Shown in pieces: positions 1 to 47,300 of a stretch of DNA of 64,000 nucleotides; position 1 is the first letter of the stretch; each line of letters begins with the position of its first letter. The stretch is from Paragordius varius (Eukaryota > Animalia > Nematomorpha): the NCBI GenBank assembly GCA_964247055.1, contig OZ176055.1, positions 4,464,001 to 4,528,000 on the forward strand, in the 5' to 3' direction. The translations under genes and the position numbers were made by a program. The notes beneath the pieces are model-generated. The model was not told the DNA's origin and did not search any database. It was given only the letters and a program-made list of their open reading frames with translations.

Positions 1-783
1 TTTCCAGCGTATCCATGTGTAATTCCTTACCTATTTTGTTTAATTCACTCCTTGTAGAACCTTCTATATATATTATAAAAATAAATATGAATTTAGTTTT
101 AAAAATTTACACCAAAAATATGGCACGTCTCATTTTTAAATATCGGCTATTTCCCCACGCCAAAGATCAAACGAAAAATATAAAATTTAGGTCCCGTTCT
201 CCTTTATATTAAAAAGTGACGTTAAAATTTGATAGAATTCATAAAAGCTTTAAATCCCTGCTTAGAGCGGATAGTAATGGAAAACTGTGCAGTTTATAAA
301 TTCGAACTTTGGCACACTGAGGCGGATAATGTGCGATCTGGCGTTTTAAAAACTTGACCACCACACCTATAAAACCAAATGTATCCAAAAAATGCCTTCG
401 ATTAATAATAACTTTAATTACGAACCGAAGTGTTCTATTTGACCAGTATACATAAATTCCAACGCATATTCTAGCATGTTGCCTCTCATCATTTTGAAAA
501 GAGAACTGCTTGTTAAATCCACCAATGTGATTTCGTTAAAGGATTGAATCTCTTCCTGATATGGACCACGAAGTATATGACAAAAATATTTACTGTAACA
601 AGCCATTATAAGTTTATGAGCATGTAATGTTTCATACGAAGTTAAAATAGTCAAATCAAATGGCTGATGTGGAGATCTTGTACGATATTTGGAAATATGC
701 ATACCCAATTTATATAAATGAATGCTTATTGGTGTCTTTAGGGTGTGTTTATAATTTAAAGCATTTTCAATTCGCATTTTCAT
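1..783 (-). CDS. BTB/POZ-domain protein (possibly BTB-BACK-kelch type), 3' partial
   Basis: Exon 783-426 encodes FDLTILTSYETLHAHKLIMACYSKYF...LEYALEFMYTGQI, a typical BTB signature. A phase-1 GT-AG intron (425-61) joins exon 60-1 (GSTRSELNKIGKELHMDTLE), which fits the last BTB helices. ATG at 783 is the first Met after intron-like AT-rich sequence. Confidence 0.85.
240..345 (-). mobile_element. tRNA-derived SINE-like fragment in the BTB intron
   Basis: Shares GTGTGCCAAAGTTCGAAT (B-box-like), CT(A/G)AGCAGG and TTAAAGCTTT in the same order as the copy at 63100-63235. Confidence 0.5.
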
Positions 784-1673
784 TAATTTGGGTATATAAA
801 GTATGCGTGTAAAATTAATTAAAATGACGTAAAATATCAATGATGTCGTTATTTTAAAATAAAAAATCAATTTTTGCGATTATAAATTAAGTTTTTTTTA
901 ATTGGTAAATAAATATTATTATAAATGCAAATTTGGTTTTAGGCAAAGTTCAGAAAAACCCGGAGAACCAGTCAAAATTAAATAATCATTTCATATTAGC
1001 ACAAAGCATTTTTATTACTCTTTGTGTTTAATCCACGTAAATTGGCTTTTATCGCAAAAATATATACCGTAAAAGACAATAAAGTTAGAAAATGTTTTAT
1101 TAACGCCGTCCGTAATTTATTCGAAAAATCCAGAGAATTTTTACTTATCAAATGTTGAATTTTAACAAATTATTCTGAAAATTTCTGAAATTTATAAATT
1201 TATGTACAACATATAATGTTAAAGAAGGGAGGAATTAGATTGGCTAATACGAATGTTTTTAAATAGGTATTAACTCGTATACTTATAAAGTAATTTTTAA
1301 CCCAATTTTTGAGCCCCATTAAACACACCTATCAAGAGGGTTGGATTTATTGATGCAACGATTATAGAAATAACTGGTTAACCTTTAGGTGTTATCAAAA
1401 AATAAAATTAAAAATTTAATCATCTCTTTATGATGTTTAAGAGAACATAGAATCAGATAAAATCATTGCTATCTTATTCTAGCTTTTAACATAATTATAG
1501 ATGTGCAGATTGGCTATTATATATCGTATACGACTAATTTTAGATTTTAATCCTTTTAAAATACATCATAAATTAAGATGTATTTCTGGCGTTTTTTTTA
1601 TTAATTACGAAATAATTTTTTTTCTAAACGGTATAAATATTTATAATTTTTTTTTCTTGTTTTATGCACAGCA

Positions 1674-10741: not shown

Positions 10742-11530
10742 TGAATTTGTTATTTTGGGATAAAACATTCATCGAAATATTAGTGATAAAAAGCATGGAA
10801 ATCAGGGAATGGAATCAGAACCGTTTTTGTGTAATTCATGTAAAACCAAAAATATGATTTTTTGGTTGCCACTTTTTGTTATAATGTTAATCTTGTTATT
10901 TAAATTATTATGTATTTGAAATAAAATTAAGTGTTTTTGATGAAATACATTAAGCTAAAACCGGATAAGATTTCCTAAAAAATACTGCTTGATAAAACTA
11001 AATTACATGATTAAAAAATTATTTATTTGTAATATTTTTTTAGGGAAATCGATAAGAATGACAGCCAAACTCTTGTTATCTATAAACAACCAGATATCAC
11101 TAACGGTAGCAGTTATGTAACCCTTTTACGCAATATAAGTCTGGCTGACGATGGATCCAATTTTGCATGTTCAGTAAAGAATGATGCAATCGATCATGAA
11201 CTTTGGGAAAATAGTACACAAACAATCCAAGTTCAATGTAATTTGAATATTTTTCTAAAATTTTATGGGTGATTATTAATGTTTTTTAATATAAAATTTA
11301 CAGAAAGACAAAGAGCATTTATATTACGGATATTTATGAAAAAGGAAATCATTAATTTTAAAAGCCCAATAAAAACGATAGATAACGAGCGTTACAGTTT
11401 CCTGTATTTTACTTATTACTAGTTACCTGAAATATCAACATATTAATATAATATACTTTTGGAGACAATTTATTAGGCAACCTTTGTCTTTAAGCCAGGC
11501 CTACACATAGATTATTCATAGAAATTTCTC

Positions 11531-11568
<38 letters not shown>

Positions 11569-14500
11569 AATCTCAAAATATCAAACAGTTCCACCCCGAA
11601 TATTCCTTAATCCATCACGACTTTCAGTGGAAGTTGGTTATGGAATTCATATCAGCTGTTTAACAGTCGCTAAACCTAAAGCTTATCAACTGACCTGGTC
11701 TATAACAACTCAATCGCTGGGAAATGACACTTTGATTAACGAAGGAAAACAAAATACGGATTACAAAATGTTAAAAGAATCGAAAAAAATGACCGATGTT
11801 GTCGTTTCTCAAGGACAAGGGCGAAAACCTAGCGAAACTGAACTAAATTGGGCCAGACGACAGTTTCCAAATTTGGGTAGATATATACAACAATATTTTT
11901 TACACATTTTTTATGAATCTTAAAATATTTTAAAAACGAAGCACCCAGTTTTTAACAGGTAGAGTCAAAATTAAAAAGGTTTTATATAGGAAACCATATC
12001 TGTTATTTTGTTTTTTTTAAACCTATATCAATACGATTAATATAAATTGAGTTGTTACTAATTTAGATCCGTATTCCATAAAATTTAAACCGATTGTTTT
12101 TATTAAAAAATGGTTGTTTCTCTTGATTAAAAAACATCTTTTTATGTTTTTTGCCATCATATTTAATTCTGAAATGAAGATAATGTACCAGTTCCCTTTC
12201 TTTATATCGATAAATCAATGATTTAAACTTTTATTTTACAGAGAATATCGAAAATTTGATTCGCGTTTTGGATTTGGAAATCCCCACCCTAACTATAAAT
12301 GATTCAATGAAAGTATTAACATGTACGGCCACTAATGGCCTCCAAAATACTCAAATGCTGTATAAAAGCTTGTATGAAGATTCCCCAAATAACGTTAAAA
12401 GTTTGGCTGATCAAAGCTCTTCGATTCCCATTGACGTTTTATGTAATTTTTTTTAATATTTAATAATAACTTTTTCACTCAAAATCCTTTAAAAAATCTT
12501 GAAAGATTAAACAATTCTTGCAAAACATATTGGTTATTTTTATCAAACATGTAAAAATACCAATAACAATCTTAGTTTTATCCGAGTATGTCAATTGTTA
12601 TGAAAAGTTAAAACATTTTCAATATAATAAATGAAATAACACTAATATATATTTTAATTACAAAATGCTTAGACGGTCCTACTGTCATAAGTGTACCCGA
12701 ATATTCAGTCAAAGAAGGATCGAACGTTTCTATCCCTTGTACTATTTATGCAAATCCTAAACCATTCAAAGTAAATATTTAACTATTTTTTGTAGAAATC
12801 AAAATTGGACAGGTGCCAAATTTAATTTTTCACAGGAAAATTGTTGAATTTTAAATAAATTTACTATGATTGTAACTAAATAATTGTGAAAGTAAAATAT
12901 TGGATTCTGCTTGCATACAATCTCTATAATTTTTTTTCCTCTTATAACTTTAATAAGCTATGATATTATAACTCGGAATTGTAAAACTTTTCTACAGTTA
13001 GGTAACAGAGTATTCCTTTTAATATTAACAATAAAATTTTTTAGGAAAAAAAACCTTAAATTAATTTTGTTTTATACAAGGTAACTTGGCGTAAGAATGA
13101 ACGGTTAATCTCAATCAACTATTTGAGTCGAGATCCCATATTAACGATTCCATCTATTAAAAAAAGTATGGCAGGTACATATGTTTGTAGAGCCGAAAAC
13201 CTGCTTAAACTCAGTTCCAAACCCAATGATGACCAATTCTCGTTTGCATCAATATCCTCAATAGATAATAAAATTAATAATATGGGTGCATCCAACAATA
13301 GATTTGATGGAAGAAAAAGCTTGAAAGTTGGGGAAAGTGTCACACGCATCTACGTATTATGTAAGTTAATTATTTATAATTTAAATTTTTAATTTTTAAT
13401 TTGGTAATGTTTGGTAAATTGTTTAAAAAATATTCCTATGCAATATTTCTTATATTATTTCCGCCCTTTAAGGCATTTAGGGGAAATTATTTTAAAGGGC
13501 CCTTCTTTATTCCGGAATCAATTTGATTTTTTAAATTTTTTCCACCATATTAGATCCTCCGGAAAGAGTCGTAATTGAACTCCCAAACGCAAATCCCCCG
13601 ACAAAATCTGTCCCAGTCAAACAATATATCAGACCCTTAAAAACTAAAACAACCAACTTACAAGCACAAAAATTATCGACATCCACGCAAACACCCAAGA
13701 TGAATCCAACCAAAGTTTTAATTGTTCAGGAGAATGAACCATTCTCACTTTCCTGTAATATTATGCCCAAAAATATATTTACATCAGTCACATCTATGAC
13801 ACCAAAACCGGACCACATTCATGAGAATAATCATAATTTGTCGTCTACAACATTCGCCTCTGTGCAAAATACCGGCGGAAATAACAATGAAATGTTTGTG
13901 GGTAATCCAAAACCCCATTACACCTGGATAGGATATCATTTTACGGACTCAAAGGCACGCCTTCAAACTCCAGATCAACTTTTTCAAACATTACTAATTA
14001 CCAACACACAATCGGATGGAAATGAACAAGAAAATTATAATTATAATAACGTCCAATTACCCAAGGGTAAACACATGATTTACTAAAAATATATATATAC
14101 CTTTTGTGAAATTTGTTCATTAATGTTTTAAAAAGTTTTTTTATATAAATATATAGGAAATATTTGAATAATGCAACTACCTTAATTTTTCCAAATATTA
14201 TATTGAATGTCACTGTGTGTTTCTTTGATTTGACTACTAATTAAGTTAAGCCATAAAGTGTGTGTAATTATAATTTATAAAAAACTATGTAATGTTAACA
14301 TTTGAATTAGGTCAAGAATTGCAATTAGCCAAAGGTCCCAATCCAATTTACCAGGTTAAACAGGCCAATGTTCAAGATACAGGAATATATTATTGTTTTG
14401 CACATAACGAAGTGGGATCAACACCCAGAGCATCACTTGCAGTCTATGTCAAAGGTGGTTTTTTACAAAATTGCTCATATCAAATTTCGTTTATTTATTA

Positions 14501-25512: not shown

Positions 25513-28500
25513 TGTTTAAAATTATAATATTATATAAAAATGAAAATATTTATACAAATTTATTACCAGTATGTATATGTTAGTCGGATGGATATTTAAG
25601 AAATACAAAAACACATAAGTTAAAATTTCTTTCCTTTTACATTGAAAAGTGTATTTAAGACTGATGAAAGCTTTAATATTTACCTGGCCAAGGCTAACAG
25701 TGATGATGGAAAAATTGTGCAGTTTTACCCATTGTATTTAATTCCGATTTATTTTGATAAAAAAATTTTAGATTAAATTTAAATTTTTTAAAGCTTTTTT
25801 AACACTATACCATTTTTTTCGTCGGGAAGATATGTGTTGAAAAGTCCAAAAGGTCCCATACCCTCAGCCCGTTTAAGAATGTCATCCGTAAAAAGAACGA
25901 CTTTGCGATGAATGACACAATCTTCAAAACTACTCTCATTACTACTTCCAAGCGTTGTAATTTTTGCGTTTATGTTACTAAACAAAGAGTATTAAAATAT
26001 TTCCGAAATACTAGGAGATGTCTAAAGACCAAACAGACTTAAAAATTATAGTTACAACCAAAATATTTAAAATTTTATTTGTCGAAAACGGTAGGATAAA
26101 TTAGATTAAATTAGTTAGCATCTTGTAAAATTTAAATTAATTATTCGTTCGGATATGCCAAATACCGAATAATACAGTTATACAATAGTGACAGATATTA
26201 ACTAATTACTCAAAAATCCTATTAAATAAAACGTAAAAATTCAAACAAAATCTACTACAGATAGGGTAAATTTTAACCCAAAGATATAGGGAAGTACCCT
26301 GCAATATTGGTATCAGGACCCTTTTTATGCCATGCTTCATTTTTGCGATTAACAACAATAATTGAATTTTGTTGATCCGAATCGATTTTGTTTTCCCAAT
26401 TACTAACTTCATCGTTATAATTTTCTTCGATAACTGGTATCATAGACTGTTTTTTTAATTTATACATTTCAGTTATTGGGTTAATGTTTGGAGAAGGATT
26501 AACATGAGATGGATTTATACTTTCATACACATTATTTCTTTGGGGATCGGAATAACGCTTTTGGCTCAAAGACAAAATCATATTGTGAAATTTGGCTATC
26601 ATTGAATAAAAAACATTAGAGTTTATACCAAATATCTTCAGGATACAATAAATATCATCAATAAAAGTAATTAGATTTCGTTCAAAATTATAAGTAGCCT
26701 AATTAACAATAGGTATACATTTCATTTGATTAACTGTGAGAGAGAGAATCGATGCTCGCCGAGGGCTGTATTCCAGATAGTATGGCACTTTTCCACTTAT
26801 TTTTTCCAATAAAATCTATTAAAAACGCAAAAAATAGATGATAGGAATTTGTTAAAATTTTATGATTAACTATAAATTTTTTCGCAAATTTTTTATAATA
26901 ACCGTTAATAAATTGTCTTTTAAAGTTTAAAATATTTGGGGTGTTTGCTTAAATTCTCAATATCTATCGCTTAAATGTTTTTATAATATTGATTATTCTC
27001 TTCTTCCAATCAAAATTAAAAAATAGATAAAAACAAGTAAACACTTTTAATACTTTAATTTTGCATGATAAATTTTTTTAAAATAAAACTTGAGTATTCT
27101 TCATTCCTTGATATGGATGTTTACCACTAATCATTTGACAAGCCAACAATCCCAAACTATAAATGTCATTTTTACCATTGTACCCGCGCAAATCCTTAAA
27201 ATAATATGAATAAATTTTTTTGTGAGTATCAACAAAAATATTTAAATGTTCGTTCTAAAAACAATTTTTGCATGTGTAAGCTCTTTCAGAAACATTACTT
27301 GTGTTTAACTCAATTTTTAACTGGGAGCAAAATTCTTTCCTATAAAATCAGCGTTTTCATAGAAAAAATTGGTGAATAAGCCCCTATTACCTTTTGGGAG
27401 ACTTTATTTGAAAAAAGTCGATGATAAGTTTTTGTCCGAAAATTGGGAGTTTAACTTTAGATAGAAATAAAAAATGCCGTATAGGTATTCAAGAGGGCTA
27501 AGTTACATTAAAGAAACATCGCAAATAGCCGCAAAAAAATTATACATTTTGAATAATAGCGTTTCTGTATTTGCGAATTTCTAACTTGTTAGAATTATTG
27601 AGATGAAATACTGAAAATAAATGAAGGGGTAAATGCTTCGCATACATCAATATTTAATCTTAATTTATACTTGTCGAATGATGCGCCCTACTTGATGAAT
27701 TACAATAATATATAAAAAAACCTAAATTTATGGTATTATTGGTAATATATATACATATTATAATAAAAATTTATATAATTATGCTGTAAAAAATACCATC
27801 CTAAAAATGTTTGACATTCTTTAAAATAAATATTTATATCAAAAGCACAAGTTCAAATGATTTACTATGAAAATTTAACATAACACTAAATACAAAAGAT
27901 AAAGCCATCTTATAACTTAAGAAATGCTCAAAACGATTAATATTAAATTGATTTGCACTTTGTTTTTTGACATTTTTTCTTAGACAGCAAAAGCCCATTT
28001 TCCGTTTTAAATGATTCCTGATCACGCTCAATTTCAATTTTTAAAAAAGAAATACACTCAAATTTGACACATTATCATAAATGAATACAAACTTGCGCTA
28101 GCGCTTCGGGACTAGCTGCAAAGATAAATGATTCTAAGATTTTGCTTTCTGTTCGACTAATGTTTAATTGTTCAGGAAAATCAAATATTTTTTGTTTTAA
28201 CATTCCATGAATATATTGAGTAGTTATTAACTCAAACCCGCCCAAAAGAGCCTTTCCTTCGCTCAATAGAAAAACATTTTTACAAGATACATTTCTATTA
28301 TATATAATGCATTATACCGATGAATTATATTTCGCATGTGGAGATATATTAAAGCTTTTAGGATGTCAAATAAAATTTTTATGGCTAAAGATTCAACAAT
28401 ACCACGATGAATTTTCTCGATTAAATATTCAATATTGCCTGGATACAAATAAATTATTACCATATTCAACAAATGGTAAATAATATTGCAAACATATTCC

Positions 28501-28732
28501 AGTGGAAAATACGTTTAGTTGGGTAAATAAATTAGAGTGTTTTAAAAGTCTAAACGCGATAAGTTCTTTCTAAAGTTTTATAACATAAAAAAACTTGAAG
28601 AGCTATTAGATCACTGTTAGATAGCATATCCATATTATATTCCTTTATGTAATATATGGTTCCATTTCTTGCACTTATACAACTTCTGTATAGTTTATCC
28701 TGACAAGCGCTTATTTCTAAGCTTAAATCCAT
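22576..28732 (-). CDS. STRAD: STE20-related kinase adapter (STRAD/Stlk) pseudokinase with a very large insert, about 817 aa
   Basis: 15 exons: 28732-28595, 28569-28461, 28438-28318, 28294-28093, 27194-27090, 26815-26719, 26595-26298, 25977-25811, 25404-25265, 24678-24560, 24468-24351, 24157-24004, 23678-23435, 23363-23157, 22810-22576 (2454 nt, divisible by 3). Motifs match STRAD as recalled: HRNVSCKNVFLLSEGKALLGG (human [21 protein letters not shown]), IFDFP, SPEALAQDLRGYNGKNDIYSLG, ILLEKISGKVP, FSSEFRAFVLACLTFDPEERPS, and WNF near the C-terminus. HRD and DFG are absent. Confidence 0.9.
24731..24885. repeat. Near-perfect inverted repeat (70/71-nt arms, 14-nt loop) in STRAD intron 9
   Basis: 24731-24800 is the reverse complement of 24815-24885 apart from one A indel. 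Confidence 0.95.
28295..28317 (-). other. 23-nt GT-AG intron (STRAD intron 3)
   Basis: GTATAATGCATTATATATAATAG. Removal restores HR|NVSCKNVFL colinear with the STRAD catalytic loop; retention shifts the frame. Confidence 0.85.
28439..28460 (-). other. 22-nt GT-AG intron (STRAD intron 2)
   Basis: GTAATAATTTATTTGTATCCAG. Removal gives FVEYG|NIEYLI (human FMAYGSAKDLI); retention gives a stop 10 codons later. Confidence 0.85.
28570..28594 (-). other. 25-nt GT-AG intron (STRAD intron 1)
   Basis: GTTTTTTTATGTTATAAAACTTTAG. Removal gives ALQ|KELIAFRLLKHSNL (human FLQGELHVSKLFNHPNI); retention hits the stop at 28550. Confidence 0.85.
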
Positions 28733-28783
28733 CAGTCATATGTCTTGTTTTTAATCGGTGCCATATGACACGATTTAAACCAC
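28733..28783. promoter_or_regulatory. Candidate 51-nt bidirectional promoter with dyad GTCATATG(T/G)C motif
   Basis: Lies between divergent ATGs (28732 on -, 28784 on +). GTCATATGTC (28735-28744) and GCCATATGAC (28760-28769) form a 9/10 inverted pair around a 15-nt spacer. Promoter function is inferred. Confidence 0.55.
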
Positions 28784-31700
28784 ATGGATCGATTGGTTCA
28801 AAAAATATTCGAGGACACTATCGAGCACATAACGTTGGGAATTGTATTTGGTATTCATAGACAAATAAAGTTTGGAATTATAACACATGAATCTCTGAAT
28901 TATGCTGGTAAATTGTTATAATTATATTAGAACTTAAGTATAAAAACCGGTCGTATTCGAGGAACCCTAAGATCCCAACAACTTCTTATGATGAAATTAA
29001 ATCAATCCAATGTGTATGCCCTAATTGTAATAGATCCATCGCAGCATGTCGATTCGCACCTCATTTGGAAAAATGTTTGGGAATGGGAAGAAACAGTTCT
29101 CGATTAGCTTCTAAGAAAATTAAGAAATCCATATATTTGGAAAACATGAATAGTGATGAAGGTGACTTGGATAACAATGTAATTAAAACAGAATTTACAA
29201 ATGATTATTTTGGTACCGACAATAATACCATCAATTCTGCAAACTATGTGGAATGTATTCCTCCACTAATTGCAACAACCATATCTAACGATTCCAATTC
29301 ACACAAGAAAAATGGTAATAAAAGCAAAAAAACTTGTAAAGAAAAGAAATCCAAAAATAATGCAGACACATTAAATAATGAATCACCCAAAACTGTTGGC
29401 GATCCAGAAGCCACAATAGTATCGATCGGGATAGGGACCATAAATTTACACAATTATCTTTACACGACTCGTAATGCTATGACTGATTCGATTGAATCAC
29501 CCGCAATTAATTCGATCACAAATCGCAGCCTAAACAATATATTGACTGAGCCTGATAGCTTACAAGCAAGGCGATGTACGCGCAGAAATGCCCAACAACA
29601 AAATCAGGTGTGTTTATATTTATCTTATGACAAATTTTTAACAATATGTAGTGATTCCCTTATAATGACATTAATGGTGACAAAATGCATGGCTCAGGAT
29701 CCTTATTGTAACTTTTTAGATAAGATTAATTTTCTAAAAACAAATTCCAAAAATGTAAAATAATATATACAAATATAATAAAATATAAGAATTTTTTGTA
29801 ATTTTTGGCTAAAGTTATACCCAACTTTCAAACAAATAAGTTGTGGGAGGTACATTCAATAAACCCATATATCTAAAAAACTAGGACTTTGATGAAATCA
29901 GAAATGTTTATGACAGCATGAGCTCTTAAGTAAAAGTGTTATTATAGATTTGCTCCACTGTCTGATAACGTCTGTAAAGAATATAAGTTAAGATTTTATT
30001 AACTTTGTCGGGTTATCAACTAATATTTGAGTTATAAATTTTATATCTTGTTTGATCTCATATTTTACGGTTGTTTTTGGAGGGTTCGATGGTTTGGTTT
30101 GATTTGTCGTCGTTCTAATATGGTTAACATATTTAAATCTGCTATTTTGTATAATCTCTTGAACTTTATACTTAAATCATAGGATAATAATTTAAAACAA
30201 TATGTTTATAACTATATCGCTTTTATATCTGTTAGTTTTTATGGCCAACATCAACTAAAACAAATGAGGTTAAAGATTCACTAACTATTATCGATAATTA
30301 CACCATACTTAATTTATCCAAAGATCCTTTGACACCTGGCTGTATATTAGTTCTGAAAGCTAGCTATATTACTAAAATGACTCCGCAAAATGGTATAATT
30401 AAATATTAATTACTGATTATATGTTTAAATCGCAGTGTGTAAATAATATTTTAAATTTCAGTTATTATACCCCTTTTTGTGAAAAGCACTATACAGTAAC
30501 GAGAGCTATTACAGGCCATATCTGTCTTTAATGGCTAAAGGGGTATTTATTTTAAATCTGTCATTTATAAAATTTTTCATGTTATTAGTTACATATTTAA
30601 TTGAACACTGTATTTTTTCACCACATTTTCAAAAATGTAACTAATAAAAACATCTCATACATGGGACTAAATACCTTTTTAGCCATTTAATTCTAATGGC
30701 CTGAACTAGTGCTCGTTACTCTACTACTTAAAAATATTCACAAAAAAGTCATCGCTTTCGAAAAATATTGACTATAATTGGTTGGCACAAATATCAAAAA
30801 ACAGTTTTTAGGCCAAAAAACCGAACAGGTTTTCACATTTTTAATTAAAAACTGAGAAAAGGAGTATTTTGAAACTAATGCGAATTGTGTTGATTGAGTC
30901 ACATTTTCATCATAAGGCGGTTTTCATCAAAAATTATAATCTAAAAAATTTATGATAAAAATAGGAAATATAGGACTCGGAAAAAAATGTCTTAGTTACT
31001 AAAACCTGTTAACCCAAAAACTAAAAGTTTGTCATAGTTTTATAGGATCTTAATTTTTTATATAGGCATTCAGGATTAAGGTTGTAAGTTTAATGGGGGT
31101 TTTTACACTATATAAGAAGTATTATTCTTTATTATATAGTTCAGTTAAATAACACCCTGGTGGATGTTCATCAAACTACATCGGCCACAAGTTTCTTGCG
31201 TCGAAGATACAGTACGAGTTTGGGTCCTTCCACAACCAAGCCTTCAAGGTGGTTGGCACAAGTTGTACCCGATTCTGTACTTTTATCTTCGGCCGAAACT
31301 GAACAACAACAGACTGCTGGACCAAGCAAACAACACCAGCAACTTCATAAAAGAAATGCCCAAACCCGCACAAATACTACCCAATACGTAACAGTAAAAT
31401 GGTTAGACATTATTATGAAACCATCATCTACTCCTGAAGATGTCAAACAACGACCACCGACTATTTCACCCATTTTTTCTGATTATTCGTTCAATGACAA
31501 TTTTTCATCAACTGCTATCCACACTTCTACTACACATGTATACAAATTTGTTGATTATGACCAACTATTGGTTGCGAATGAAAACGCTGACAATACAATT
31601 ACAGGAAAAACGATCGAGAGAATAAAAACTAACCCACCCACAAACTCGCTTAAAAACAAACCAAATTATTTGAGCAACAAACATGATTCTACCGTCAAAG

Positions 31701-31849
31701 AACAATACCAAATTATTGATATTGACGCCATAGCTTTGGCAATAAAATTTAGGCATTCAATAGATGATAACCCTGATAAAGTTGTGAATGATGCATTTAT
31801 TAGCGAACGAGCTTTGCAAAGCTTTAAATCTGCATCCTTAAGCTCTTAG
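28784..31849 (+). CDS. SGF11: SAGA-associated factor 11 homolog (SGF11/ATXN7L3), about 501 aa
   Basis: Exons 28784-28907, 28931-29607 and 31145-31849. N-terminal helix [24 protein letters not shown] and zinc finger [33 protein letters not shown] match the family. The last exon has no recognisable domain and is joined on phase (0/0) and position only. Confidence 0.88.
28908..28930 (+). other. 23-nt GT-AG intron (SGF11 intron 1)
   Basis: GTAAATTGTTATAATTATATTAG. Retention gives an in-frame TAA; removal joins the N-terminal helix to the zinc finger. Confidence 0.88.
30494..30722. mobile_element. MITE family B (TA-flanked, about 55-nt imperfect TIRs), copy 1
   Basis: CAGTAACGAGAGCTATTACAGGCCAT...AATGGCTAAAGGGGTATTTA is inverted to TAAATACCTTTTTAGCCATT...ATGGCCTGAACTAGTGCTCGTTACT. 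A related copy lies at 50632-50858. Confidence 0.65.
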
Positions 31850-38300: not shown

Positions 38301-41300
38301 TACCATCCCTTAAATTGGATAAAATTGATTTATTTATTTATTAAGTTTTATAAGCTTACCAACAAAGTATGAAATTGGATCATATATTTCTTGACTACTT
38401 TACAAGCCCTGACAAAAAGTTGTATAATTCCAATCCAAAGCTTTAGTGTCTCTAAGTGTAGCCCTAAATGGTGTCCAACACAAATGACTTCGGGAACCGC
38501 ATTTGAAAAATATATGGACATTGATATTTCATTAAATTTTGACACATAAGACTGTTTTTGCAAAAACAATATAACTGCTATGTATTTAACCAACATTTGT
38601 TTATGTAAGACTTATTCAAAAAAATTTGTTCAAGAAATATCAATTTTTCAAAGATTTTGTGAGCATATTGCGAATTATAAAATTTCCTATTATATATTAG
38701 GTATTCTTCAAAAAAATTCGGCCTGCACATAATATTTCGGGAAGCCACATGTTGGACACCCTTGGTCCTGCCCACAAACTGCTTAAAAATAAAAACCTGT
38801 GGGTTGACAAACTAGCTTACAGTGTAATATAAACTTTATGCAATTTGACATCCCAAGAACAGTAGAGGATATATTTGCGATTTGCCAACTGCTAAAACAC
38901 CTAAGGCCTCTACATTAAGCCTATTCGGCATTTGATTCTGTTTCCGTTCTAGATCATTGACTGTCCATACGACAAGGGTTAGACAAGATGTAATCACCTT
39001 TTAGAAGCTCTTTACTAAACATAATTATCTCCAGTGTTGGTGATGCAAAACCAATCAATTGTGATAATGGCTTTTCATCAAAATTTAATTATAAGTTCTT
39101 TATTTATAATTATTTATCGTTTGAGCTCCTTTATGCAAATAACTGAATCTTGCATGATATATCAGTGAAAGTTTTGGAATAAAACTAATGAAAAGACATT
39201 TTGGCTACATTTGTTTAAAACATTATCACATCAATAACTCATTTATGAGAATAACACGTTTTCAAAAACCGATCATGTTTTATCATTCGTTAGATGTAAC
39301 GTTTGATACGCATTCGTTCCACATCGCATTCAAAATGTATTTAAATTTCATAAGCTGAAATTTTTAGCGCTACCATATGGCCTGCCATATTGTATAGATT
39401 TTACACATGATCAATCCCGAAATCTAAATATCTTTTACTCCAAAAAGCTATGATGCCGCTAAACCCATATTTCAGGCATCCTCGATACCAACTAAACCTA
39501 TATCAAAGTACTCAATCTGCAAACTAAAAACATCGATTACGTTGACCTATGTTCACAAATCCAAATTTTATAAAGATATTACAATTATACGCATCTAATC
39601 GAAAATAAGTAGCCCATGTAATACTTGGACACATGCCATATAAAAGGTGCAACACCTAAACAACAAACGAAAAGTTTAAATTTACTATTTTTTTGAAAAT
39701 TTTATCAAATGTAGCATATGGTCAAAAATATATTCAAAATTTAATGAAAACATTTTACTAACCATATTTTTTCATATTTCCCACTGTTCCAAGATTAATA
39801 AAAGGATCTTCATCATCAATAAAATCATTGTTTTTGGACAATTGTTTTGTGTCAACCGATGAAATAGCGTTATCCAAAATTAAAGTTAATGATGTACTAT
39901 CAGACTTATTAACAATATTGTAGGAGGAATCCGTATGGTGCATATAAGAAAGTGAAACATTTGGAATTTTAAACAATGTATCCGCATTTGCAGGGTTAAA
40001 TGTTGAAATTGTCGAAAAAACTGATGAAATTGATGTGGTAAGAGCGGTTACTATTTTCGTTTTAGAAAGGGCAACTAACATGTTTGCTATATCATTATCA
40101 CTTAAAATTGTTTTATTCGCAGTTGGATTTAATTGAGTTGTTCCAACGCTTAAGCAAAATTTATTCACGTGGGTTAATATGGTATCAGGCAATGAAATTT
40201 TGTTTGGTACTAGGCTAATATTTAGATTTTTTAACAAAGATCCACTAAAATTAGGGCCTAAATTGGGGATGTTCACTGTTGTATTATTATTTAGAGGATT
40301 AGAATAGGTTGTTTGTATTGATATTTTTTCAGAACCGGTAGGCGCTCGAAGAAGAGGTTGAGACACAAAATAAGATGTTAATCCACAACCCAAACTGGGA
40401 ACGTTTTGCAAATTTTTCGCCATTATCGGTTGAGATTGTGAAAAATTTGATTGAATGCCTGTTTCATGATAACTAATCGATTTCTTAGTACCATTTATAT
40501 TTGGTCCAAAATTATTTGTTATGCAAACATTGCTATATTTGAAATTGTTAATAGGACAGAGGGTGCGAGAATTGGTATTATTTAGATAATAAAGTACATC
40601 ATTGAAAAACGTGGTTGTTGTATTAATATTAGCACTCTTACAATTCGAATCGAAAGTATTTTTAGCGTTGTTTGATTTTAAATCATTTAGCATGTTGATA
40701 TTTGACATAGCATTATTTAAATTATTACTGTTATTCAAGACATAAACAGTGGGGCTCAGTACGTTACTGAAAGGAGAAGATGATATTACTATAGAATTAA
40801 TAGGCATTTTAGCTATTGTTTTTGAGCCTGATACGTGATTACTACAATAATTAGCGATTTGCAAATCAGTACTAGCGCCATTAAATTGTGATGAAACCGT
40901 CATACAACTTGTCACAGGGGCAATGCTCTCATAATTGCTGTTATTGAAGTTATTGTTATTATTAAATATAGAAAAGGGCCTTAAATGCGGAACATTTATT
41001 TGAGGCGTTGAAATTAAGGTTATTTTCGGAATATTCAAACACAAATTTTTGCCGCCATTGTTAACGTAAACATTCAAGGGTGTCAAATTTATATTATTGT
41101 GACTGGAGGGGAAAACAAGGCTTTGAGTAACATTTGAAACGCTATGGTTATTAAGCACCATGTTTAATCGGGCCAAATTCAGACTTGGGATCATTGCAGT
41201 GGATATAGTCAAGTTTTTTATTATATTATTGACATTATTATTGGAAGGTACCATGGAATACACCAGATTAGAAGTTAAATTAACGTTTGGTGTTGGCATA

Positions 41301-44300
41301 ACAAAGTTGGGAGTAGCATTCGTACCAGTTGAAATTACGATAACATTCCCTTCCTGAGAACTCCGTATAATAGAAGAAGAATGGCCATCGGCGCCCATAC
41401 CATTACCAGCCAATAACCAGGAGGAACAGGTCAGAGATTGGTCATCAACATTCCCAAACAACGAGGATGAATTATTGGTACTGCCACCAAGCTGTGTAAG
41501 TAATTGTTGATTGCTGCTGTTGTTATTATGATTAGAGGAGGAGGAATTGGTAAGGATCGAATTACTATTCTCCTCATCCACGGTCGTATTATCAAAAGAA
41601 AGAAGTGATTGATTAGTACCGCCAGAAGAGTTTTGTCGTTGGAGCAAGTGTTGTTGTTTATTGCCGCCGAGATGTCGGCTACAAAAGCCTCGACGCTGAG
41701 ACTCCTTTGGACATTCGGGATGGGTACACAGTCTGCGCCATTGTTTTCCATTAAACTTTTTACGGACACCTTGTGACGTGAGTACAACATCACCCTTCTT
41801 ATAAATCGTGGTAGATGGGTGGAGTAAGGTTGAACAACCTCCCATAAGCACTGAACTATTACTTAGGGAAGAACTCAGGGTCGAAGATGATGATCCACAG
41901 TAAAATGGATTGTGTGAACTCAAACAATTATCTAATCTTGTGGTCATTAAATAACCAAGAGAGCTTGATGGTGTCAACAAAAAGCCTGACTTATTGCCGG
42001 TTCCACCATTTTTATATAAAGATCCAGCAGCGGTAGGTATCAAACTGTTTAGTGATAAGGGTGTTGATATGATTTGCGAGAAATTATTATTAGTATTGTC
42101 CCTTAAGGATAAAACTGAAGCATGAGATATATTAGAAGCGAATAAACTAGTAACAAAATTTAAATTGTTCATTCCCACAATTTTGTATTCGGGGATTGCG
42201 CTCATAACATTAGGGATATTTGAGGGAAATTGTTTGAGTTGAGAATTTGAGCAGTTCATTACTGTCAAACTAAGTGTCTTGATATTATTTTTTAGCATAT
42301 TCGTATCAACCACTAAAGGAGGTTCAGTTTTCGTTTGTATATTTGGAAAAGAAAAATTAGCCTTTTCCACCTTAGTTAATGGCATTTTTGTTTTGGTTGT
42401 AAGAACATTACCATTTATTTGAGAATTGCTGTTTTCAATCGAAGAAACCGTGTTAATCGAAACATTATTACTCATGTCGGGCGTTTGAGTTATCATTTCG
42501 ATAGGCATGATTCCTATATAAATTTAATCAAATATTTTTGAAAATATAAACATGAATCTAAGTATAAAATAAAAAAATAATAAGGCAATGGACAGGTAAA
42601 CTATTGTACTAAAAACTTATAAATAGTATTTGTGTTAACAAAGTTTATTGATAGATGTCAAATTAATATTTGATAGAAATAATCAGTCAATCAAAGTATT
42701 AGTCAAGGTCATATTGCATTAAAAATTTATGAATTAGCTGGGAACATAATTAAGGCATAAATCCAGTTATCGTATTTTATTTCATTAAGCCCCTTAAAGT
42801 TTTATTAATAATTAAAATTTTTCATACAATAGTCCATAAAATAGCCGACTCAAAAACAAAAATATTTTCCATATTTTGAAACGTATTACTTTGTACAGGG
42901 GTGTCCAACAACGGGCCCCATTCGCAAAATATATGGTCAATAACGAATATTTTGTTAGAACATTAGACTGTAAAAACTACTAATGATTTTAACATTTTTT
43001 GGTACTTCATTGGCAAAATTTGGAAAGATTTTTTCAATAAATTTGTTAAAAAAATTATTTTTACTTGGATTTTAAAAATTTTACATTCGACATTTTTCGT
43101 AAGCTGCATGGCGCGGCCCATGTTGAACACCCCTGCTTTATTATATCAAAAGTTTTATTGAAAATATGGCTTAAAAAGAAATATTTTACAAAAACCCGAA
43201 ACCAAATCAATATGAAATCGATAAATAGAAAAATATGTTTTACAAAACCGAACGAAAAAGAACACAAGGCCACGCGCACTAGCCAGAATCCGATTTACTG
43301 AAAAAGCCTTTATGTTAAACACATGTTTTTAATAAAAATTAAAGACATAGTGTGTAAAAACCAAGCATTTTTAGCAAAACAAGCTTTTAGTTTCATGTTT
43401 GATATTTTTGAAAGACGCTTCTTCTTATTAATGTCAAAATTAAAATAGAAGAGTATAAATTATTTATTTTATTATCATCTATTGATTAGTAAACCATTAA
43501 CCGTTTTGATAAAAAAATAATATTTTTATAACGAACCTTTTTTCAGATTTTAAAACCCGGTGAATGTCCCTATCTAAAAATAAGAAAATAAAAACTACAT
43601 TTTTATATGGGCGCACTATGCATACTATCTGTGTTGCAAATTGCCCAACTATAGTGTGAAATAACCATTAAAATGCATACTCAAAAATATAAAAATTAAT
43701 ATCAATCAATTTTAAATCTTATTTCAAGTATAGTATTATATTTGAGTCTTTCAATAAAGTGTATGAATTAAGATATCACTAATTTAACCATTTATTCTGT
43801 CTCATTTTGGATTAGTTATTTGGTAACACTTTAATCTTTTGAGGTAGTTTTAAAGAGATTTAAAATTTGAACATCCTAAAAAGTATTTAAGGTATTGGGC
43901 CAATTTTAAAAATTTCTTTCATTAGTTTTTACGCGCATGCTTCAATTTTTTTATATCCCTAATACAGCAGGCAAATAAATGTTTATTAAAGAGTTAGAAA
44001 ATGTAAAGGTTAGATTAAACCAGCTGTTTGCTTTCAATCGGATATTCAGGTTTTTTGAACTCTAGATCAGGGTTGTCAAAAACGCTTAGGCAGCATTTGG
44101 ACTCAAAAAAACCGGCAGGCCGTATTATGGGTTTTAATTTATATATTATAAGATTTCAAACATAAGACTGTAAAACGAAAAACAATATAACAATTTATTA
44201 TTTGCCAATCGGATGGACTATTTAGAAAAATTAATTAAAAAAATCAATTTTGCTAAAATTTTGTGTGCTTATTTTATTTCCAAATTATGGATTCCCAAAT

Positions 44301-47300
44301 ATTTCGCCGTCCGCATATGATGTCCCGAAGGGCCGCATGTTGGACACCCCTGCTCTGGATGATAAAAACTGAAAAAATATAATACCTAATACAAAAACAA
44401 TAATTGTTAATTAAATTTTAACCAAAAGAACTTTCAAAACTGTAGTTTATTTTCAGGTTTTATGGGATATAAAAGTACCTAAAACATAATCGTCTGCAAA
44501 AAATGAAAATATAAGTCGGCACTGAAATACGAAAAACTCCAATCTGATTACGAAAAATATTATTTATAAGAAAACAATTTGAAGCGAAATTTGGTTTCGT
44601 TTTCATAATATTTCTGTGTGTTAGCTTAGGCGCAGTCAACTATCACGTTTAGCATTAAAGTGTTATTAAAGTAAAAATATATGATCATTAAAAATAAAAT
44701 GAGCAATATTTTAATATTTTCAACCGCTAATTACCTACAAAAATATATCGATTTTAATGTAATAAAAATATCATTAAAAACTTGTTTTTTAAAATGTAGA
44801 TGACCATTACTAAAGCTTCCGATAGTGTATCTATAATTTCGTTTTAGGTACTAAATGGGCACGCAGACACCGCCTTTTTATTTTTGATTTAGTCTATATT
44901 TTCAAACATAGCCATGGCCAAAAATGAAAAGTAAAAATCATTTGAATTTCTGAATTTTTTTCGTAATTATAGGAAAGGTATAGTCATTTTGTGGGCGTAA
45001 TGTTAATAATATAACAATTTTATGTGATTTATCAATTATTTTACAAGAAAACACTTAAGATTTTAAACTAGATCCGTTTGAAGAAGCTTTTTCCATTAAA
45101 ATGGAGTCCAATTTATAAGTAACTTTCTGATTTCGACGATAATATTGAGTTGCCCACTTGCTATATTTTTTTTATAGAAATTAATGTTTATACTTCAGGT
45201 TACGACAAAGAGCTAAATAATATTATTTTTGGAAAGGCTTACAGAATACAAGATGTATAATCTAAGGTTATGTAACAAAAGTTTATTTCCGTTTTTTTGA
45301 ATGAAACGCTTAAATCAATATAATGTATGCTAGAATAAAAAGTTCGAACAAAAAATTTTTTAATTTGCTTAGGGCAAAAAAGTTTTAAATATTTGAAATT
45401 TTTAGAAATTAAAAAGATAACAAAACCATAATACCAAATTTTTATTCATGGGAACAATAACACCAAAATTATAATGTTATACGATAAGGTAAATTTGGCA
45501 CAATGCATTTACCTGGCCGAAATTTTTGAAAAATATATCAAATTATAGAAATATCAATTAAAATTTTGATTTGAAAGGGTTACTAGAAGCCTTTCTGATA
45601 TGATTAAATTCAGGATGGTGACTGTAATCAAAGTTTTTAAACACGTGTTTGCCACGTGATATCAAATAAATATAAAGTAATAAAGAAATTTATATTTATT
45701 GCGAACAAATTTAAAATTGTAAATTTATTACTAATAATGTTATTAACAATATTAGATTAATTTTTTGGTTAATTTCGTTTTTTTATAGGCATAGGAAATG
45801 CTTTCGATTAAGTATTTGTCGACATTAAAACAGTCATACCGATTATTATTTTTTAAATGGTTAAATAACTAACGCCAATTCTCATTTATCAATTATGTCA
45901 AAAGTATCTAAAACCATAAAAAGGGAAAAATATATTTTTTCAAAATATTGGTTATTAACAACACAACAATGGTAGAAAAATTTACATGATCATGGGTGAT
46001 TTTTCCAAATCATGGCTTTTTTGATATGCTACACTAAAACATATAAAGGGTAGGTACTAATATTTAACCTGTAGGATTGTTCATCACTGGACACGGCACT
46101 TGATTATAATCCACAAGCGTATGATCTAGGGGAAGAGGAACAATACGGTTCGTATAAAAAAACAATTCCTCGTGCCAAGGCCATTTAAGAATTCGGAGAT
46201 TATTGCGTTTACACCAGACCTCAGCTATCATTCCATTAGATGGATTTGCCAGATTTGGAAATGTTGATTGATTTGTGATTCCAGGGGTGTATGATAGATT
46301 ATTATTATTGCCATTTAAAGGTTTAACAAAACGTGCCAGAAATGAAAGAGAATTCGAGTCAAAGGCGAGTAGAACAGCTTCTGCAAAAACTCTAACAGAC
46401 GAATTTAGATTGTGTTGATTATTCATATTATTATTATTATGAAGAGGAAGATATGGAATTGAGTTTATGTTAGGGGTCGAAATAGTGGCTATGGATTGAA
46501 TAAAATTTTCTCCCGTTACATTTGTCATGCCATGCAAATTTCTGGACATTGGATTTGATGGAGATATCATGACATTACTTATATTACAACAAGCCAAGAT
46601 ACGATAATTGAGAGGTATGGTGTCTAAAATAATAGATTCCGCTCCTTGTTCAATAACCATATCAGGGTTGGGGAATAGCAGTTTTCGTTTTTCAGCAAGC
46701 CATGCTTGAGTGTTGGGTATCAAAGCAAGCAGTTCTGTTATCGAGGGAATACTATCACTTACCATATCTATTCTGCTGTATAAATCACTCGATTGATATG
46801 AACTAAAATCAAATGTTCCTATTGTGCCCAACAAACCGGGTGGTGAGTTTAAACCTCTTTCATACTCCAAAGCTATAACGTTTCCCACAATCCATTTGAT
46901 TCCGGCTTTGTGGTATAAATTTCGCTCATCATTTCTGACATTGCAATCTAAGTACAAAAAATTAAATCTTTAGGCTCGAAAATGGGATAGTTTGAAAGGT
47001 ATATTATTTCGCTAATATTTTTACAAATAAAACAAATTAAATAAGGTTTCGAGATTACTCACCCCATTGGATATAGAGTCATTGATTAAATTATAAGATT
47101 CGAAAGTAGGGGTCCTTAACCGTATAGGCGACAAATGGGGAACATAAAATGCAAACATATTTATCAAAAATACTGGACAACAATTTTTAGCCAATCAAAT
47201 TTTTGGATATTCTGATTTTTACGATCATTTAAACAGTAAATCTGAATCAAAAATTATAATGCATAAGATTTATTTAAAATTTGATTTTTTATGATTATGC

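What the first reader, a model, noticed from the sequence alone, without database searches (positions are those of the whole stretch)
28295..28930. Four ultra-short (22-25 nt) spliceosomal introns clustered around one bidirectional promoter in an animal genome
Seen: STRAD introns 1-3 (25, 22, 23 nt) and SGF11 intron 1 (23 nt) are GT-AG. Each must be removed to restore a conserved reading frame, each removal gives gap-free or near gap-free colinearity with the family motif, and none is a multiple of 3. The other 57 introns modelled in this window are 67-2858 nt, leaving an empty gap from 26 to 66 nt. Established: most animal introns exceed roughly 40-50 nt; introns of 20-30 nt are known mainly from ciliates, chlorarachniophyte nucleomorphs and dicyemids. 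Inference: this animal has a separate tiny-intron class, here confined to promoter-proximal positions. That could reflect cap-proximal or non-canonical spliceosome assembly, local deletion pressure, or retention-coupled NMD control of two co-transcribed genes.
Basis: partly seen in the sequence, partly recalled or inferred. Interest (0 to 1): 0.92.

Follow-up and report, generated by a model that had tools for sequence, protein, structure and literature searches.

The report
Four tiny introns, two head-to-head genes
Two neighbouring genes of a very AT-rich worm genome, probably a horsehair worm's, are each interrupted near their start by what are almost certainly real introns of only 22-25 bases, a size published for just two other animal groups; nothing shows that the shared promoter causes this.

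Summary
The four GT-AG segments exist as described: 25, 22 and 23 nt in a STRAD-like kinase gene (minus strand) and 23 nt in SGF11/ATXN7L3 (plus strand). Each changes the reading frame, and each gives an early stop if kept.

Independent DNA contigs span three of the four without gaps, so they are not assembly errors.

For SGF11 the evidence is strong. The N-terminal helix and the zinc finger lie in different frames, 12-30 nt apart. Natural variants are mostly silent in exactly those two frames. A fish orthologue has a phase-1 intron in a Glu codon at, or within five residues of, the same place.

For the kinase gene the support is weaker. It rests on Pfam profile coordinates and kinase motifs only, because no orthologue could be fetched.

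No RNA could be examined, so the splicing itself is inferred.

The promoter-proximal, special-mechanism reading is not supported. The head-to-head arrangement is absent in Gordionus and seems to differ in a related sample.

This scan has already noted the same tiny-intron class at many other places in this genome. That is a lead I did not test.

The published record (MBE, September 2026) lists introns under 30 bp only in myxobolid Myxozoa and Dicyema.

The parts
28595..28732 (-). STRAD-like kinase gene, exon 1 (46 codons, first ATG of its open frame)
   Evidence: Reading. An in-frame stop lies just upstream, at 28736-28738. One variant (28658) is silent in this frame.
28570..28594 (-). tiny intron 1, 25 nt, GT-AG, phase 0
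   Evidence: 47 open codons upstream and 46 downstream. Read-through stops after 14 codons (ORF 28550-28732). DNA depth is present in three runs, but no listed contig spans it.
28461..28569 (-). kinase exon 2 (109 nt)
   Evidence: Open frame; the spliced translation is continuous.
28439..28460 (-). tiny intron 2, 22 nt, GT-AG, phase 1 (rival model: 31 nt, 28416-28446)
   Evidence: Contigs from X1, X2 and X3 span it with 0 gaps.
28318..28438 (-). kinase exon 3; ends in the His-Arg of the catalytic-loop motif
   Evidence: Pfam Pkinase profile positions 92-121, ending at the last residue of the piece. PDB kinases align up to the same last residue.
28295..28317 (-). tiny intron 3, 23 nt, GT-AG, phase 2, splits the Arg codon of His-Arg
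   Evidence: 65 and 72 open codons on either side. An X1 contig covering 28212-28571 spans it with 0 differences.
28093..28294 (-). kinase exon 4 (catalytic loop to the SPE motif)
   Evidence: The spliced translation is continuous into exon 5. Its nearest feature clusters are kinase fragments, which is a lead only. No relative was found by sequence.
27195..28092 (-). ordinary intron 4, 898 nt
   Evidence: GT at 28092 and AG at 27195-27196. It is indel-polymorphic in run X3.
27090..27194 (-). kinase exon 5 (subdomain IX)
   Evidence: Pfam Pkinase positions 173-204, E = 4.9e-4.
26276..26815 (-). 3' part of the kinase gene: a 38-codon stretch, an in-frame TAG (26699-26701), then a 141-codon stretch; the intron here is unresolved (36, 72, 90, 99 or 123 nt)
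28733..28783 (.). 51-nt spacer between the two start codons, holding an 8-nt inverted repeat and upstream ATGs on both strands
Evidence: Reading.
28784..28907 (+). SGF11/ATXN7L3 exon 1: N-terminal helix
   Evidence: My own profile of the helix region from 31 homologues hits this stretch with E = 4.7e-6; the next best of 1,313 stretches scores 0.26. tblastn with the Gordionus protein also matches it. Of 3 variants here, 2 are silent and 1 is Ile to Leu.
28908..28930 (+). tiny intron, 23 nt, GT-AG, phase 1 inside a GAA (Glu) codon
   Evidence: The helix frame stops at 28919-28921 and the finger frame opens only after 28911. X1 and X3 contigs span it with 0 gaps. Sterlet has a phase-1 intron in a GAA codon within 5 residues of this point.
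28931..29760 (+). SGF11 exon 2: Sgf11 zinc finger and a low-complexity tail (3' end of the exon not fixed)
   Evidence: Pfam Sgf11, E = 8e-16. The best hit is Gordionus ATXN7L3. Six of 8 listed variants are silent in this frame.
30490..30650 (.). repeated element inside the long second SGF11 intron
   Evidence: Depth rises 2- to 4-fold, with many loose ends, in all DNA runs.
31160..31846 (+). probable last SGF11 exon (a C-terminal extension shared with Gordionus)
   Evidence: A weak local alignment to the C-terminus of P0122, score 40.

Best explanation
The four segments are genuine U2-type GT-AG spliceosomal introns, spliced out constitutively. They belong to an ultra-short size class of about 22-25 nt. 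In effect this is the 'minimal intron' mode of this genome, probably that of a horsehair worm (Nematomorpha) or a close relative, shifted far below the usual 45-90 nt of animals.

They are most likely recognised across the intron, using three signals:
- a reduced 5' signal (GTA or GTT);
- an A about 5-8 nt before the 3' end;
- a TAG or CAG 3' end, with no room for a pyrimidine tract.

All four shift the frame and bring an early stop if retained. Unspliced RNA would therefore give a truncated product.

I read their position at the 5' ends of two divergent genes as clustering of short introns, not as a promoter-specific mechanism. On this reading the gene starts have stayed free of the insertions that enlarged the downstream introns.

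Shown:
- the segments exist in DNA;
- the frames change across them;
- both SGF11 frames are under coding constraint.

Inferred:
- removal from RNA;
- the recognition mode;
- the reason for the 5' position.
For: - Coordinates, GT-AG ends, lengths, phases and read-through stops were read directly.
- Contigs from two DNA samples span introns 2, 3 and the SGF11 intron with no gaps, and no joint or indel is listed at any of the four.
- SGF11: the helix lies in one frame (own profile E = 4.7e-6, next best 0.26). The zinc finger lies in another (Pfam 8e-16). tblastn with the Gordionus orthologue finds both parts in those two frames.
- After removal, the helix-to-finger spacing equals the vertebrate one (42 residues) with no gap.
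- Nine of the 12 listed natural variants are silent in the frames of the spliced model. Six of the 7 variants nearest the SGF11 intron are silent, and the seventh is Ile to Leu. In the other frames most of these variants would change a residue or touch a stop.
- Sterlet ATXN7L3 has an intron of about 780 nt, phase 1, inside a GAA codon, between the same two domains.
- Kinase gene: exon 3 matches Pkinase positions 92-121 up to its last residue. Exon 5 matches positions 173-204. Exon 4 begins with a catalytic-loop-like motif and ends with an SPE motif.
- The long SGF11 intron holds a repeated element.
- Introns under 30 bp with a reduced 'GTa' 5' site, A residues just upstream of the AG, and short neighbouring introns are documented in myxobolids and Dicyema (PMC13644364).
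Against: - No RNA was examined. The only read-laying run returned DNA-like contigs, and the small RNA runs of this species do not hold the locus.
- No orthologue of the kinase gene could be fetched. Exon 4 alone finds no relative among 1.84 billion representatives, and exons 1, 2 and 4 have no Pfam or PDB match of their own. For three of the four introns, colinearity therefore rests on motifs.
- Intron 2 has a rival 31-nt model, and intron 3 has rival 29- and 32-nt models that fit the kinase motif worse.
- Gordionus has no intron at the SGF11 site.
- MAFFT places the sterlet intron 5 residues away from this one.
- Window-wide ORF statistics show no excess of 22-25-nt GT-AG candidates.
Confidence: 0.78

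Rival explanations
1. A promoter- or cap-proximal splicing mode. On this view tiny introns are tolerated only close to the transcription start, because the cap-binding complex or the polymerase helps to assemble the spliceosome there. The shared bidirectional promoter would then couple intron retention and NMD of the two genes.
For: - All four tiny introns lie within 440 nt of the two start codons, which are 51 nt apart.
- Downstream introns of the same genes are 274-898 nt and over 1 kb.
- The 3' introns of the CERT gene in the window are about 0.4 and 2.3 kb.
- Several earlier notes on this genome say such introns lie near gene starts. These are leads I did not test.
Against: - Three successive introns spread over 440 nt are not all cap-proximal.
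- The pairing of the two genes is absent in Gordionus and seems to differ in a related sample.
- The kinase gene may have a 36-nt intron in its 3' half.
- Clustering of short introns along a gene is reported in myxozoans without any link to promoters (PMC13644364).
- No transcription start is known here.
Confidence: 0.12
2. The true junctions are different. The tiny segments would then be parts of somewhat larger introns (about 29-37 nt, or more) that also remove a few codons.
For: Other GT-AG pairs that keep an open frame exist at two of the junctions. Intron 2 has a 31-nt alternative, and intron 3 has alternatives of 29 and 32 nt.
Against: - The alternatives at intron 3 replace the catalytic-loop-like motif with unrelated residues.
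- The SGF11 model reproduces the vertebrate helix-to-finger spacing exactly.
- Even the alternatives are introns of about 30 nt, so the main point would stand.
Confidence: 0.06
3. One or both genes are decaying pseudogenes, and the segments are small insertions that happen to start with GT and end with AG.
For: - The kinase exons are very divergent: exon 4 has no detectable relative.
- No RNA shows that the genes are expressed.
Against: - All four disruptions have GT-AG ends and similar sizes, and there are no other frame breaks inside the exons.
- SGF11 variants are mostly silent in both frames.
- The zinc finger is highly conserved.
Confidence: 0.03
4. The segments are assembly or sequencing artefacts, or DNA that is cut out of somatic cells rather than out of RNA.
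For: None was found.
Against: - Contigs from runs of two samples carry the segments unchanged.
- No contig lacks them, and no joint is listed at these places.
- One caveat: one of the runs may be the sample that the assembly was made from.
Confidence: 0.01

Closest known systems
Ultra-short introns of myxobolid Myxozoa (Henneguya, Thelohanellus, Myxobolus; median 22-27 bp), PMC13644364
   Same: - GT-AG introns under 30 nt in an animal.
- A 5' signal reduced to about GTa, A residues shortly before the AG, and no pyrimidine tract.
- Short introns sit next to other short introns.
- The host is a parasite with an AT-rich genome.
   Different: - In myxobolids they are the typical intron of compact genomes (20-200 Mb, few transposons), and long cDNA reads show the splicing.
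- Here they sit beside introns of 0.3 to over 1 kb in a repeat-bearing genome.
- In this window they occur only at the starts of two genes.
- The splicing has not been shown.
Dicyema japonicum introns (about 26 bp), as cited in PMC13644364
   Same: The size class and reduced splice signals are the same, and the host is also a parasite.
   Different: In Dicyema nearly all introns are short and the genome is compact.
Tiny introns of ciliates (Paramecium about 20-30 nt, Stentor 15-16 nt); PMC13644364 cites them, and the details are from my own knowledge
   Same: - The size is similar.
- Lengths avoid multiples of 3, and retention gives an early stop. For Paramecium this has been described as translational policing of splicing.
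   Different: Ciliates are unicellular eukaryotes in which all introns are tiny, and some use altered genetic codes.
The 41-nt intron in Gordionus SGF11 (locus L001, 11288-11328)
   Same: It lies in the closest available relative, in the same gene, in an AT-rich genome, and starts with GTAA.
   Different: - It is almost twice as long and lies at another position, near the 3' end.
- Gordionus has no intron where this window has the 23-nt one.

Membership tests
U2-type GT-AG spliceosomal intron | GT at the 5' end and AG at the 3' end | tested here: met
   All four segments.
U2-type GT-AG spliceosomal intron | Removal restores one reading frame that is colinear with homologues | tested here: met
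   - SGF11: the helix and the finger are in two frames, and after removal the spacing to vertebrates is gap-free.
- Kinase gene: only partly met. The frame is continuous and Pfam coordinates fit for exons 3 and 5, but no orthologue is available.
U2-type GT-AG spliceosomal intron | Absent from mature mRNA | not testable with these tools
   The runs that hold the locus are DNA-like, and the one read-laying run is spent.
U2-type GT-AG spliceosomal intron | Present in genomic DNA | tested here: met
   Contigs with 0 gaps span three of the four; intron 1 is supported by depth only.
U2-type GT-AG spliceosomal intron | Position shared with introns of orthologues | tested here: inconclusive
   - Sterlet has a phase-1 intron in a GAA codon, either 5 residues away or at the same place, depending on how a poorly conserved linker is aligned.
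- Gordionus has no intron there.
- The kinase gene was not testable.
Animal ultra-short intron class (under 30 nt) | Length under 30 nt | tested here: met
   22, 23, 23 and 25 nt.
Animal ultra-short intron class (under 30 nt) | A recurrent genome-wide class rather than isolated cases | not tested
   - Only leads from earlier notes of this scan.
- The 64-kb window is too small: the ORF-joining scan shows no length peak.
SGF11 / ATXN7L3 | N-terminal helix followed by an Sgf11-type zinc finger | tested here: met
   Pfam PF08209, E = 8e-16. Helix profile E = 4.7e-6. Best hit is Gordionus ATXN7L3.
STRAD (STE20-related pseudokinase adaptor) | A kinase fold that lacks the catalytic Asp and the DFG motif, and is orthologous to STRAD | tested here: inconclusive
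   - Kinase-like pieces match weakly.
- The spliced sequence has Asn in place of the catalytic-loop Asp and Gly-Phe-Glu in place of Asp-Phe-Gly.
- No STRAD sequence could be fetched for comparison.

The most novel reading that the evidence does not exclude
A third, independent animal lineage (Nematomorpha or a close relative) has evolved introns of 21-28 nt. It would be the first to do so in a large, repeat-rich genome where such introns share genes with kilobase introns and are polarised towards gene starts. The spliceosome of an otherwise ordinary bilaterian would then handle both extremes. Gene finders with the usual minimum intron lengths would break or miss many hairworm genes, which could inflate the reported loss of universal animal genes in this phylum.
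Probability: 0.35. Interest if true: 0.8.

Novelty: new member of a known kind. Interest (0 to 1): 0.62.

Why it matters
The most recent survey (PMC13644364, September 2026) found introns under 30 bp in only two animal lineages, both with compact genomes. It predicted that more would turn up.

A horsehair-worm lineage with 22-25-nt introns beside long ones would show two things:
- extreme intron shortening does not need genome compaction;
- one spliceosome can serve both size ranges within a single gene.

There is also a practical side. Hairworm genome papers report low BUSCO scores (71.6% for Gordionus) and do not mention introns. If gene predictors and read mappers reject such introns, some 'missing' genes may be annotation failures. 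I did not test this point.

Tried and rejected
1. RNA evidence. The look-up of sequencing runs returned five runs that hold the locus. All behave as DNA: depth is even over introns and spacers, and there are no splice joints. The RNA-labelled runs of the species hold none of the sampled words.

2. A STRAD orthologue.
- Exon 4 alone, searched against 1.84 billion representatives, gave only two spurious repeat proteins.
- PDB searches with exons 1-4 gave nothing, or marginal kinase hits.
- The tools take no spliced protein by reference.

3. The Gordionus locus. It has no intron at the SGF11 site and no kinase gene within 10 kb.

4. A window-wide statistical test for a tiny-intron class. I scanned for GT-AG pairs that join open frames, by length, against seven decoy dinucleotide pairs, and with a codon-usage score.
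- There were about 5 chance candidates per length, and GT-AG showed no excess.
- The codon score did not recognise even the kinase exons.
- I dropped this test as uninformative for a 64-kb, 28% GC window.

5. Other candidates from that scan.
- 396-421 (after the BTB domain) is unconvincing.
- 11075-11139 and 11627-11655 lie inside Ig-domain exons.
- 60045-60636 are frame breaks in a decayed reverse-transcriptase element.

6. Taxonomic placement with the capicua ORF gave broad animal hits and no resolution.

7. Pfam on the kinase 3' stretches gave nothing useful.

8. Rfam found nothing in the window.
Full report
**What is there**

The window is 24-36% GC throughout. Two genes lie head to head.

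On the minus strand an open frame starts at ATG 28732, directly after an in-frame stop. On the plus strand another starts at ATG 28784, also the first ATG after a stop. The spacer between them is 51 nt.

Reading the sequence and locating the segments by script gives:

| Gene | Segment | Length | Phase |
|---|---|---|---|
| Kinase gene (minus strand) | 28570-28594 | 25 nt | 0 |
| Kinase gene (minus strand) | 28439-28460 | 22 nt | 1 |
| Kinase gene (minus strand) | 28295-28317 | 23 nt | 2 |
| SGF11 (plus strand) | 28908-28930 | 23 nt | 1 |

- All four begin with GT (three GTA, one GTT) and end with AG (three TAG, one CAG).
- None is a multiple of three.
- Each leads to a stop within a few codons if read through.
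- The frames on either side are open for 36-72 codons, and for 276 codons downstream of the SGF11 segment.
- With the segments removed, the kinase-like exons 1-5 translate as one continuous protein. So does SGF11, from the first Met into the zinc finger.

**Not an artefact of assembly**

The five runs that hold the locus behave as DNA. Depth is even over introns and spacers, and no splice joints appear.

| Contig | Span | Tiny introns covered | Differences |
|---|---|---|---|
| X1 | 28212-28571 | introns 3 and 2 | 0 differences |
| X2 | 28311-28546 | intron 2 | 0 gaps |
| X3 | 28322-28558 | intron 2 | 0 gaps |
| X1 | 28811-29227 | SGF11 intron | 0 gaps |
| X3 | 28890-29123 | SGF11 intron | 0 gaps |

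Intron 1 is supported only by depth in its bins; no listed contig spans it.

No joint or indel is listed at any of the four. The long introns, by contrast, show indels between samples. X1 and X2 may come from the assembled individual. X3 is another sample.

**SGF11: the strong case**

- Exon 2 carries the Sgf11 zinc finger (Pfam, E = 8e-16).
- The best database hit is ATXN7L3 of Gordionus sp. m RMFG-2023 (E = 2.5e-24). The next hits are vertebrate, at about 1e-17 to 1e-18.
- I built a profile from only the N-terminal helix region of 31 distinct homologues. Among all 1,313 stop-free stretches of the window it hits the stretch 28769-28918 with E = 4.7e-6; the next best is 0.26.
- tblastn with the Gordionus protein finds the helix and the finger in two different frames.
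- The helix frame closes at 28919-28921, and the finger frame opens only after 28911. Any join must therefore happen within a few bases of there, or else delete conserved residues.
- After removal of the 23 nt, the distance from the conserved His-Arg of the helix to the first Cys of the finger is 42 residues. That equals the vertebrate distance, and MAFFT aligns the two without a gap.

An independent line comes from natural variation. Twelve listed differences between the window and the DNA contigs fall in these exons. Nine are silent in the frames of the spliced model:

| Exon | Variants listed | Silent | Other |
|---|---|---|---|
| Kinase exon 1 | 1 | 1 | none |
| SGF11 exon 1 | 3 | 2 | Ile to Leu |
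| SGF11 exon 2 | 8 | 6 | 2 changes to Ser (Thr to Ser, Asn to Ser), in the low-complexity tail |

Six of the 7 variants nearest the SGF11 intron are silent, and the seventh is the Ile-to-Leu change. In the other two frames most of these variants would change a residue or create or remove a stop. Both exons are thus under coding constraint, each in its own frame. This fits an expressed, spliced gene and argues against a pseudogene.

**Comparison of intron positions**

- In Gordionus (locus L001) the helix and the finger are in one exon. The only intron of the gene model is 41 nt long and lies near the 3' end.
- In the sterlet (locus L002) an intron of about 780 nt separates the helix exon from the finger exon. 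It is phase 1 and lies inside a GAA (Glu) codon.
- The window's tiny intron is also phase 1 inside a GAA (Glu) codon.
- MAFFT places the two introns five residues apart. An alignment that matches a Glu-Ser-Leu/Met triplet puts them in the same place, at the cost of two compensating gaps in a poorly conserved linker.

This is compatible with an old intron that shrank here and was lost in Gordionus. It does not prove it.

**The kinase gene: the weaker case**

- Exon 3 matches Pfam Pkinase positions 92-121, right up to its last residue (E = 0.016).
- Exon 5 matches positions 173-204 (E = 4.9e-4).
- PDB kinases align to exon 3 up to that same last residue.
- Exon 4, which must fill the profile positions between, begins with a motif like the catalytic loop. 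It has Asn where active kinases have Asp. It has Gly-Phe-Glu where they have Asp-Phe-Gly, and it ends with a Ser-Pro-Glu motif just before exon 5. That is the make-up of a pseudokinase.
- Exons 1, 2 and 4 find nothing on their own in Pfam or the PDB.
- Exon 4 finds no true relative among 1.84 billion representatives.
- Only a feature search points to kinase fragments, and that is a lead.

I could not fetch a STRAD sequence. The name 'STRAD' and the gap-free colinearity at introns 1 and 2 therefore rest on family motifs known from the literature, not on a test made here.

Rival GT-AG pairs exist: 31 nt for intron 2, and 29 or 32 nt for intron 3. The intron 3 rivals destroy the catalytic-loop motif. 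All rivals are still tiny introns.

**Is it promoter-specific?**

Within these two genes the tiny introns come first.
- The kinase gene continues with introns of 898 and 274 nt.
- SGF11 continues with one of over 1 kb, which holds a repeated element (a depth spike and loose ends at about 30490-30650).
- The 3' exons of the CERT gene in the window are separated by about 2.3 and 0.4 kb.

That is suggestive, but it is only two genes. Several points speak against a link with this promoter:
- Gordionus has no kinase gene within 10 kb of SGF11.
- A contig from a related sample (organism B) runs into unlike sequence 9 nt upstream of the kinase ATG.
- The 3' half of the kinase gene has an in-frame TAG between open stretches of 38 and 141 codons. 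An intron must remove it, and a 36-nt GT-AG segment is the shortest realistic candidate (a 9-nt GT-AG pair also fits the frame); alternatives are 72-123 nt.
- Short introns with short neighbours are a reported property of myxozoan genes (PMC13644364).

Earlier notes of this scan describe the same class in many other genes of this genome, several of them 'near their starts'. One note reports about 63 such introns in seven genes, and one reports RNA support in a neighbouring gene. I treat these as leads, not evidence.

My ORF-joining scan could neither find further convincing tiny introns in this window nor show an excess. Chance gives about five candidates per length in such AT-rich DNA.

**What is known**

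A paper of September 2026 (PMC13644364) surveyed 51 animal genomes.
- It found introns under 30 bp only in myxobolid Myxozoa (median 22-27 bp) and in Dicyema japonicum.
- These have 5' sites reduced to 'GTa', a few A residues shortly before the AG, canonical U2 and U2AF, and short introns next to short introns.
- It does not mention Nematomorpha.
- The Gordionus genome paper and a comparative paper on four hairworm genomes do not use the word intron.

The four introns here fit that description in size and signals. All four have an A at position 17, which is 5-8 nt before the 3' end. With four cases, that is not significant.

**Organism**

The evidence for a horsehair worm or a close relative is:
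- the Gordionus best hit for SGF11;
- a weakly similar C-terminal extension shared only with the Gordionus protein;
- similar base composition (28% GC here, 28.5% in L001, 26.9% for the Gordionus assembly).

The capicua gene gave no resolution. The genome is not Gordionus itself: identity is 57% even around the zinc finger.

**Verdict**

- The reading as real ultra-short introns is well supported for SGF11 and reasonably supported for the kinase gene.
- The reading as a promoter-bound special mechanism is not supported.
- Splicing in RNA remains to be shown.
- The same class was noted before by this scan on other DNA of this genome.

Noticed in passing
window 28733-28783: The two start codons are only 51 nt apart. 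The spacer holds an 8-nt inverted repeat (28735-28742 and 28762-28769), each arm containing CATATG. There are upstream ATGs on both strands. On the minus strand a 10-codon upstream frame ends in a TGA whose A is the A of the kinase ATG. Either the 5' UTRs are extremely short, or the transcripts overlap, or their 5' ends are made in some other way.
   Followed up: partly
window 26699-26701 (minus strand): A single in-frame TAG lies between open stretches of 38 and 141 codons in the 3' half of the kinase gene. A 36-nt GT-AG segment (26699-26734) would remove it. So would segments of 72, 90, 99 or 123 nt.
   Followed up: partly
window 30401-30800: DNA depth is 2-4 times that of the flanks, with many loose ends in all runs. 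This is a repeated element inside the long second intron of SGF11.
   Followed up: no
L001 10001-11490 (Gordionus) compared with window 28784-31849: The two SGF11 genes share no intron position. Gordionus has one 41-nt intron near the 3' end. The window has a 23-nt intron near the 5' end and a long one in the middle. Intron turnover between these relatives therefore seems high.
   Followed up: partly
window 28741, run X4 (organism B): A contig from a differently labelled organism matches kinase exon 1, then continues for 255 letters that are unlike the window, starting 9 nt upstream of the ATG. The head-to-head arrangement may not be shared.
   Followed up: no
window 29513-29550: Run X3 skips 36 nt and has 3 other letters in their place. 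This is a net 33-nt, frame-preserving length difference in the low-complexity tail of SGF11 exon 2.
   Followed up: no
window 59900-60900 (plus strand): A decayed reverse-transcriptase-like element with several frame breaks lies inside an intron of the minus-strand CERT gene. Its frame breaks mimic tiny introns in an ORF-joining scan.
   Followed up: partly
window 39758-42508 and 46064-46957 (minus strand): Large exons of a capicua (CIC) homologue: DUF4819 plus a conserved N-terminal Cys/His motif, with broad animal hits.
   Followed up: partly
window 61020-61349, 58567-58791, 58058-58294 (minus strand): These are the last three exons of a CERT-like gene with a START domain, separated by introns of about 2.3 and 0.4 kb.
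   Followed up: partly
window 421-870 (minus strand): A gene with a BTB/POZ domain. A 26-nt GT-AG candidate directly after the domain (396-421) joins two open frames, but the downstream sequence does not look like the end of a BTB domain.
   Followed up: partly
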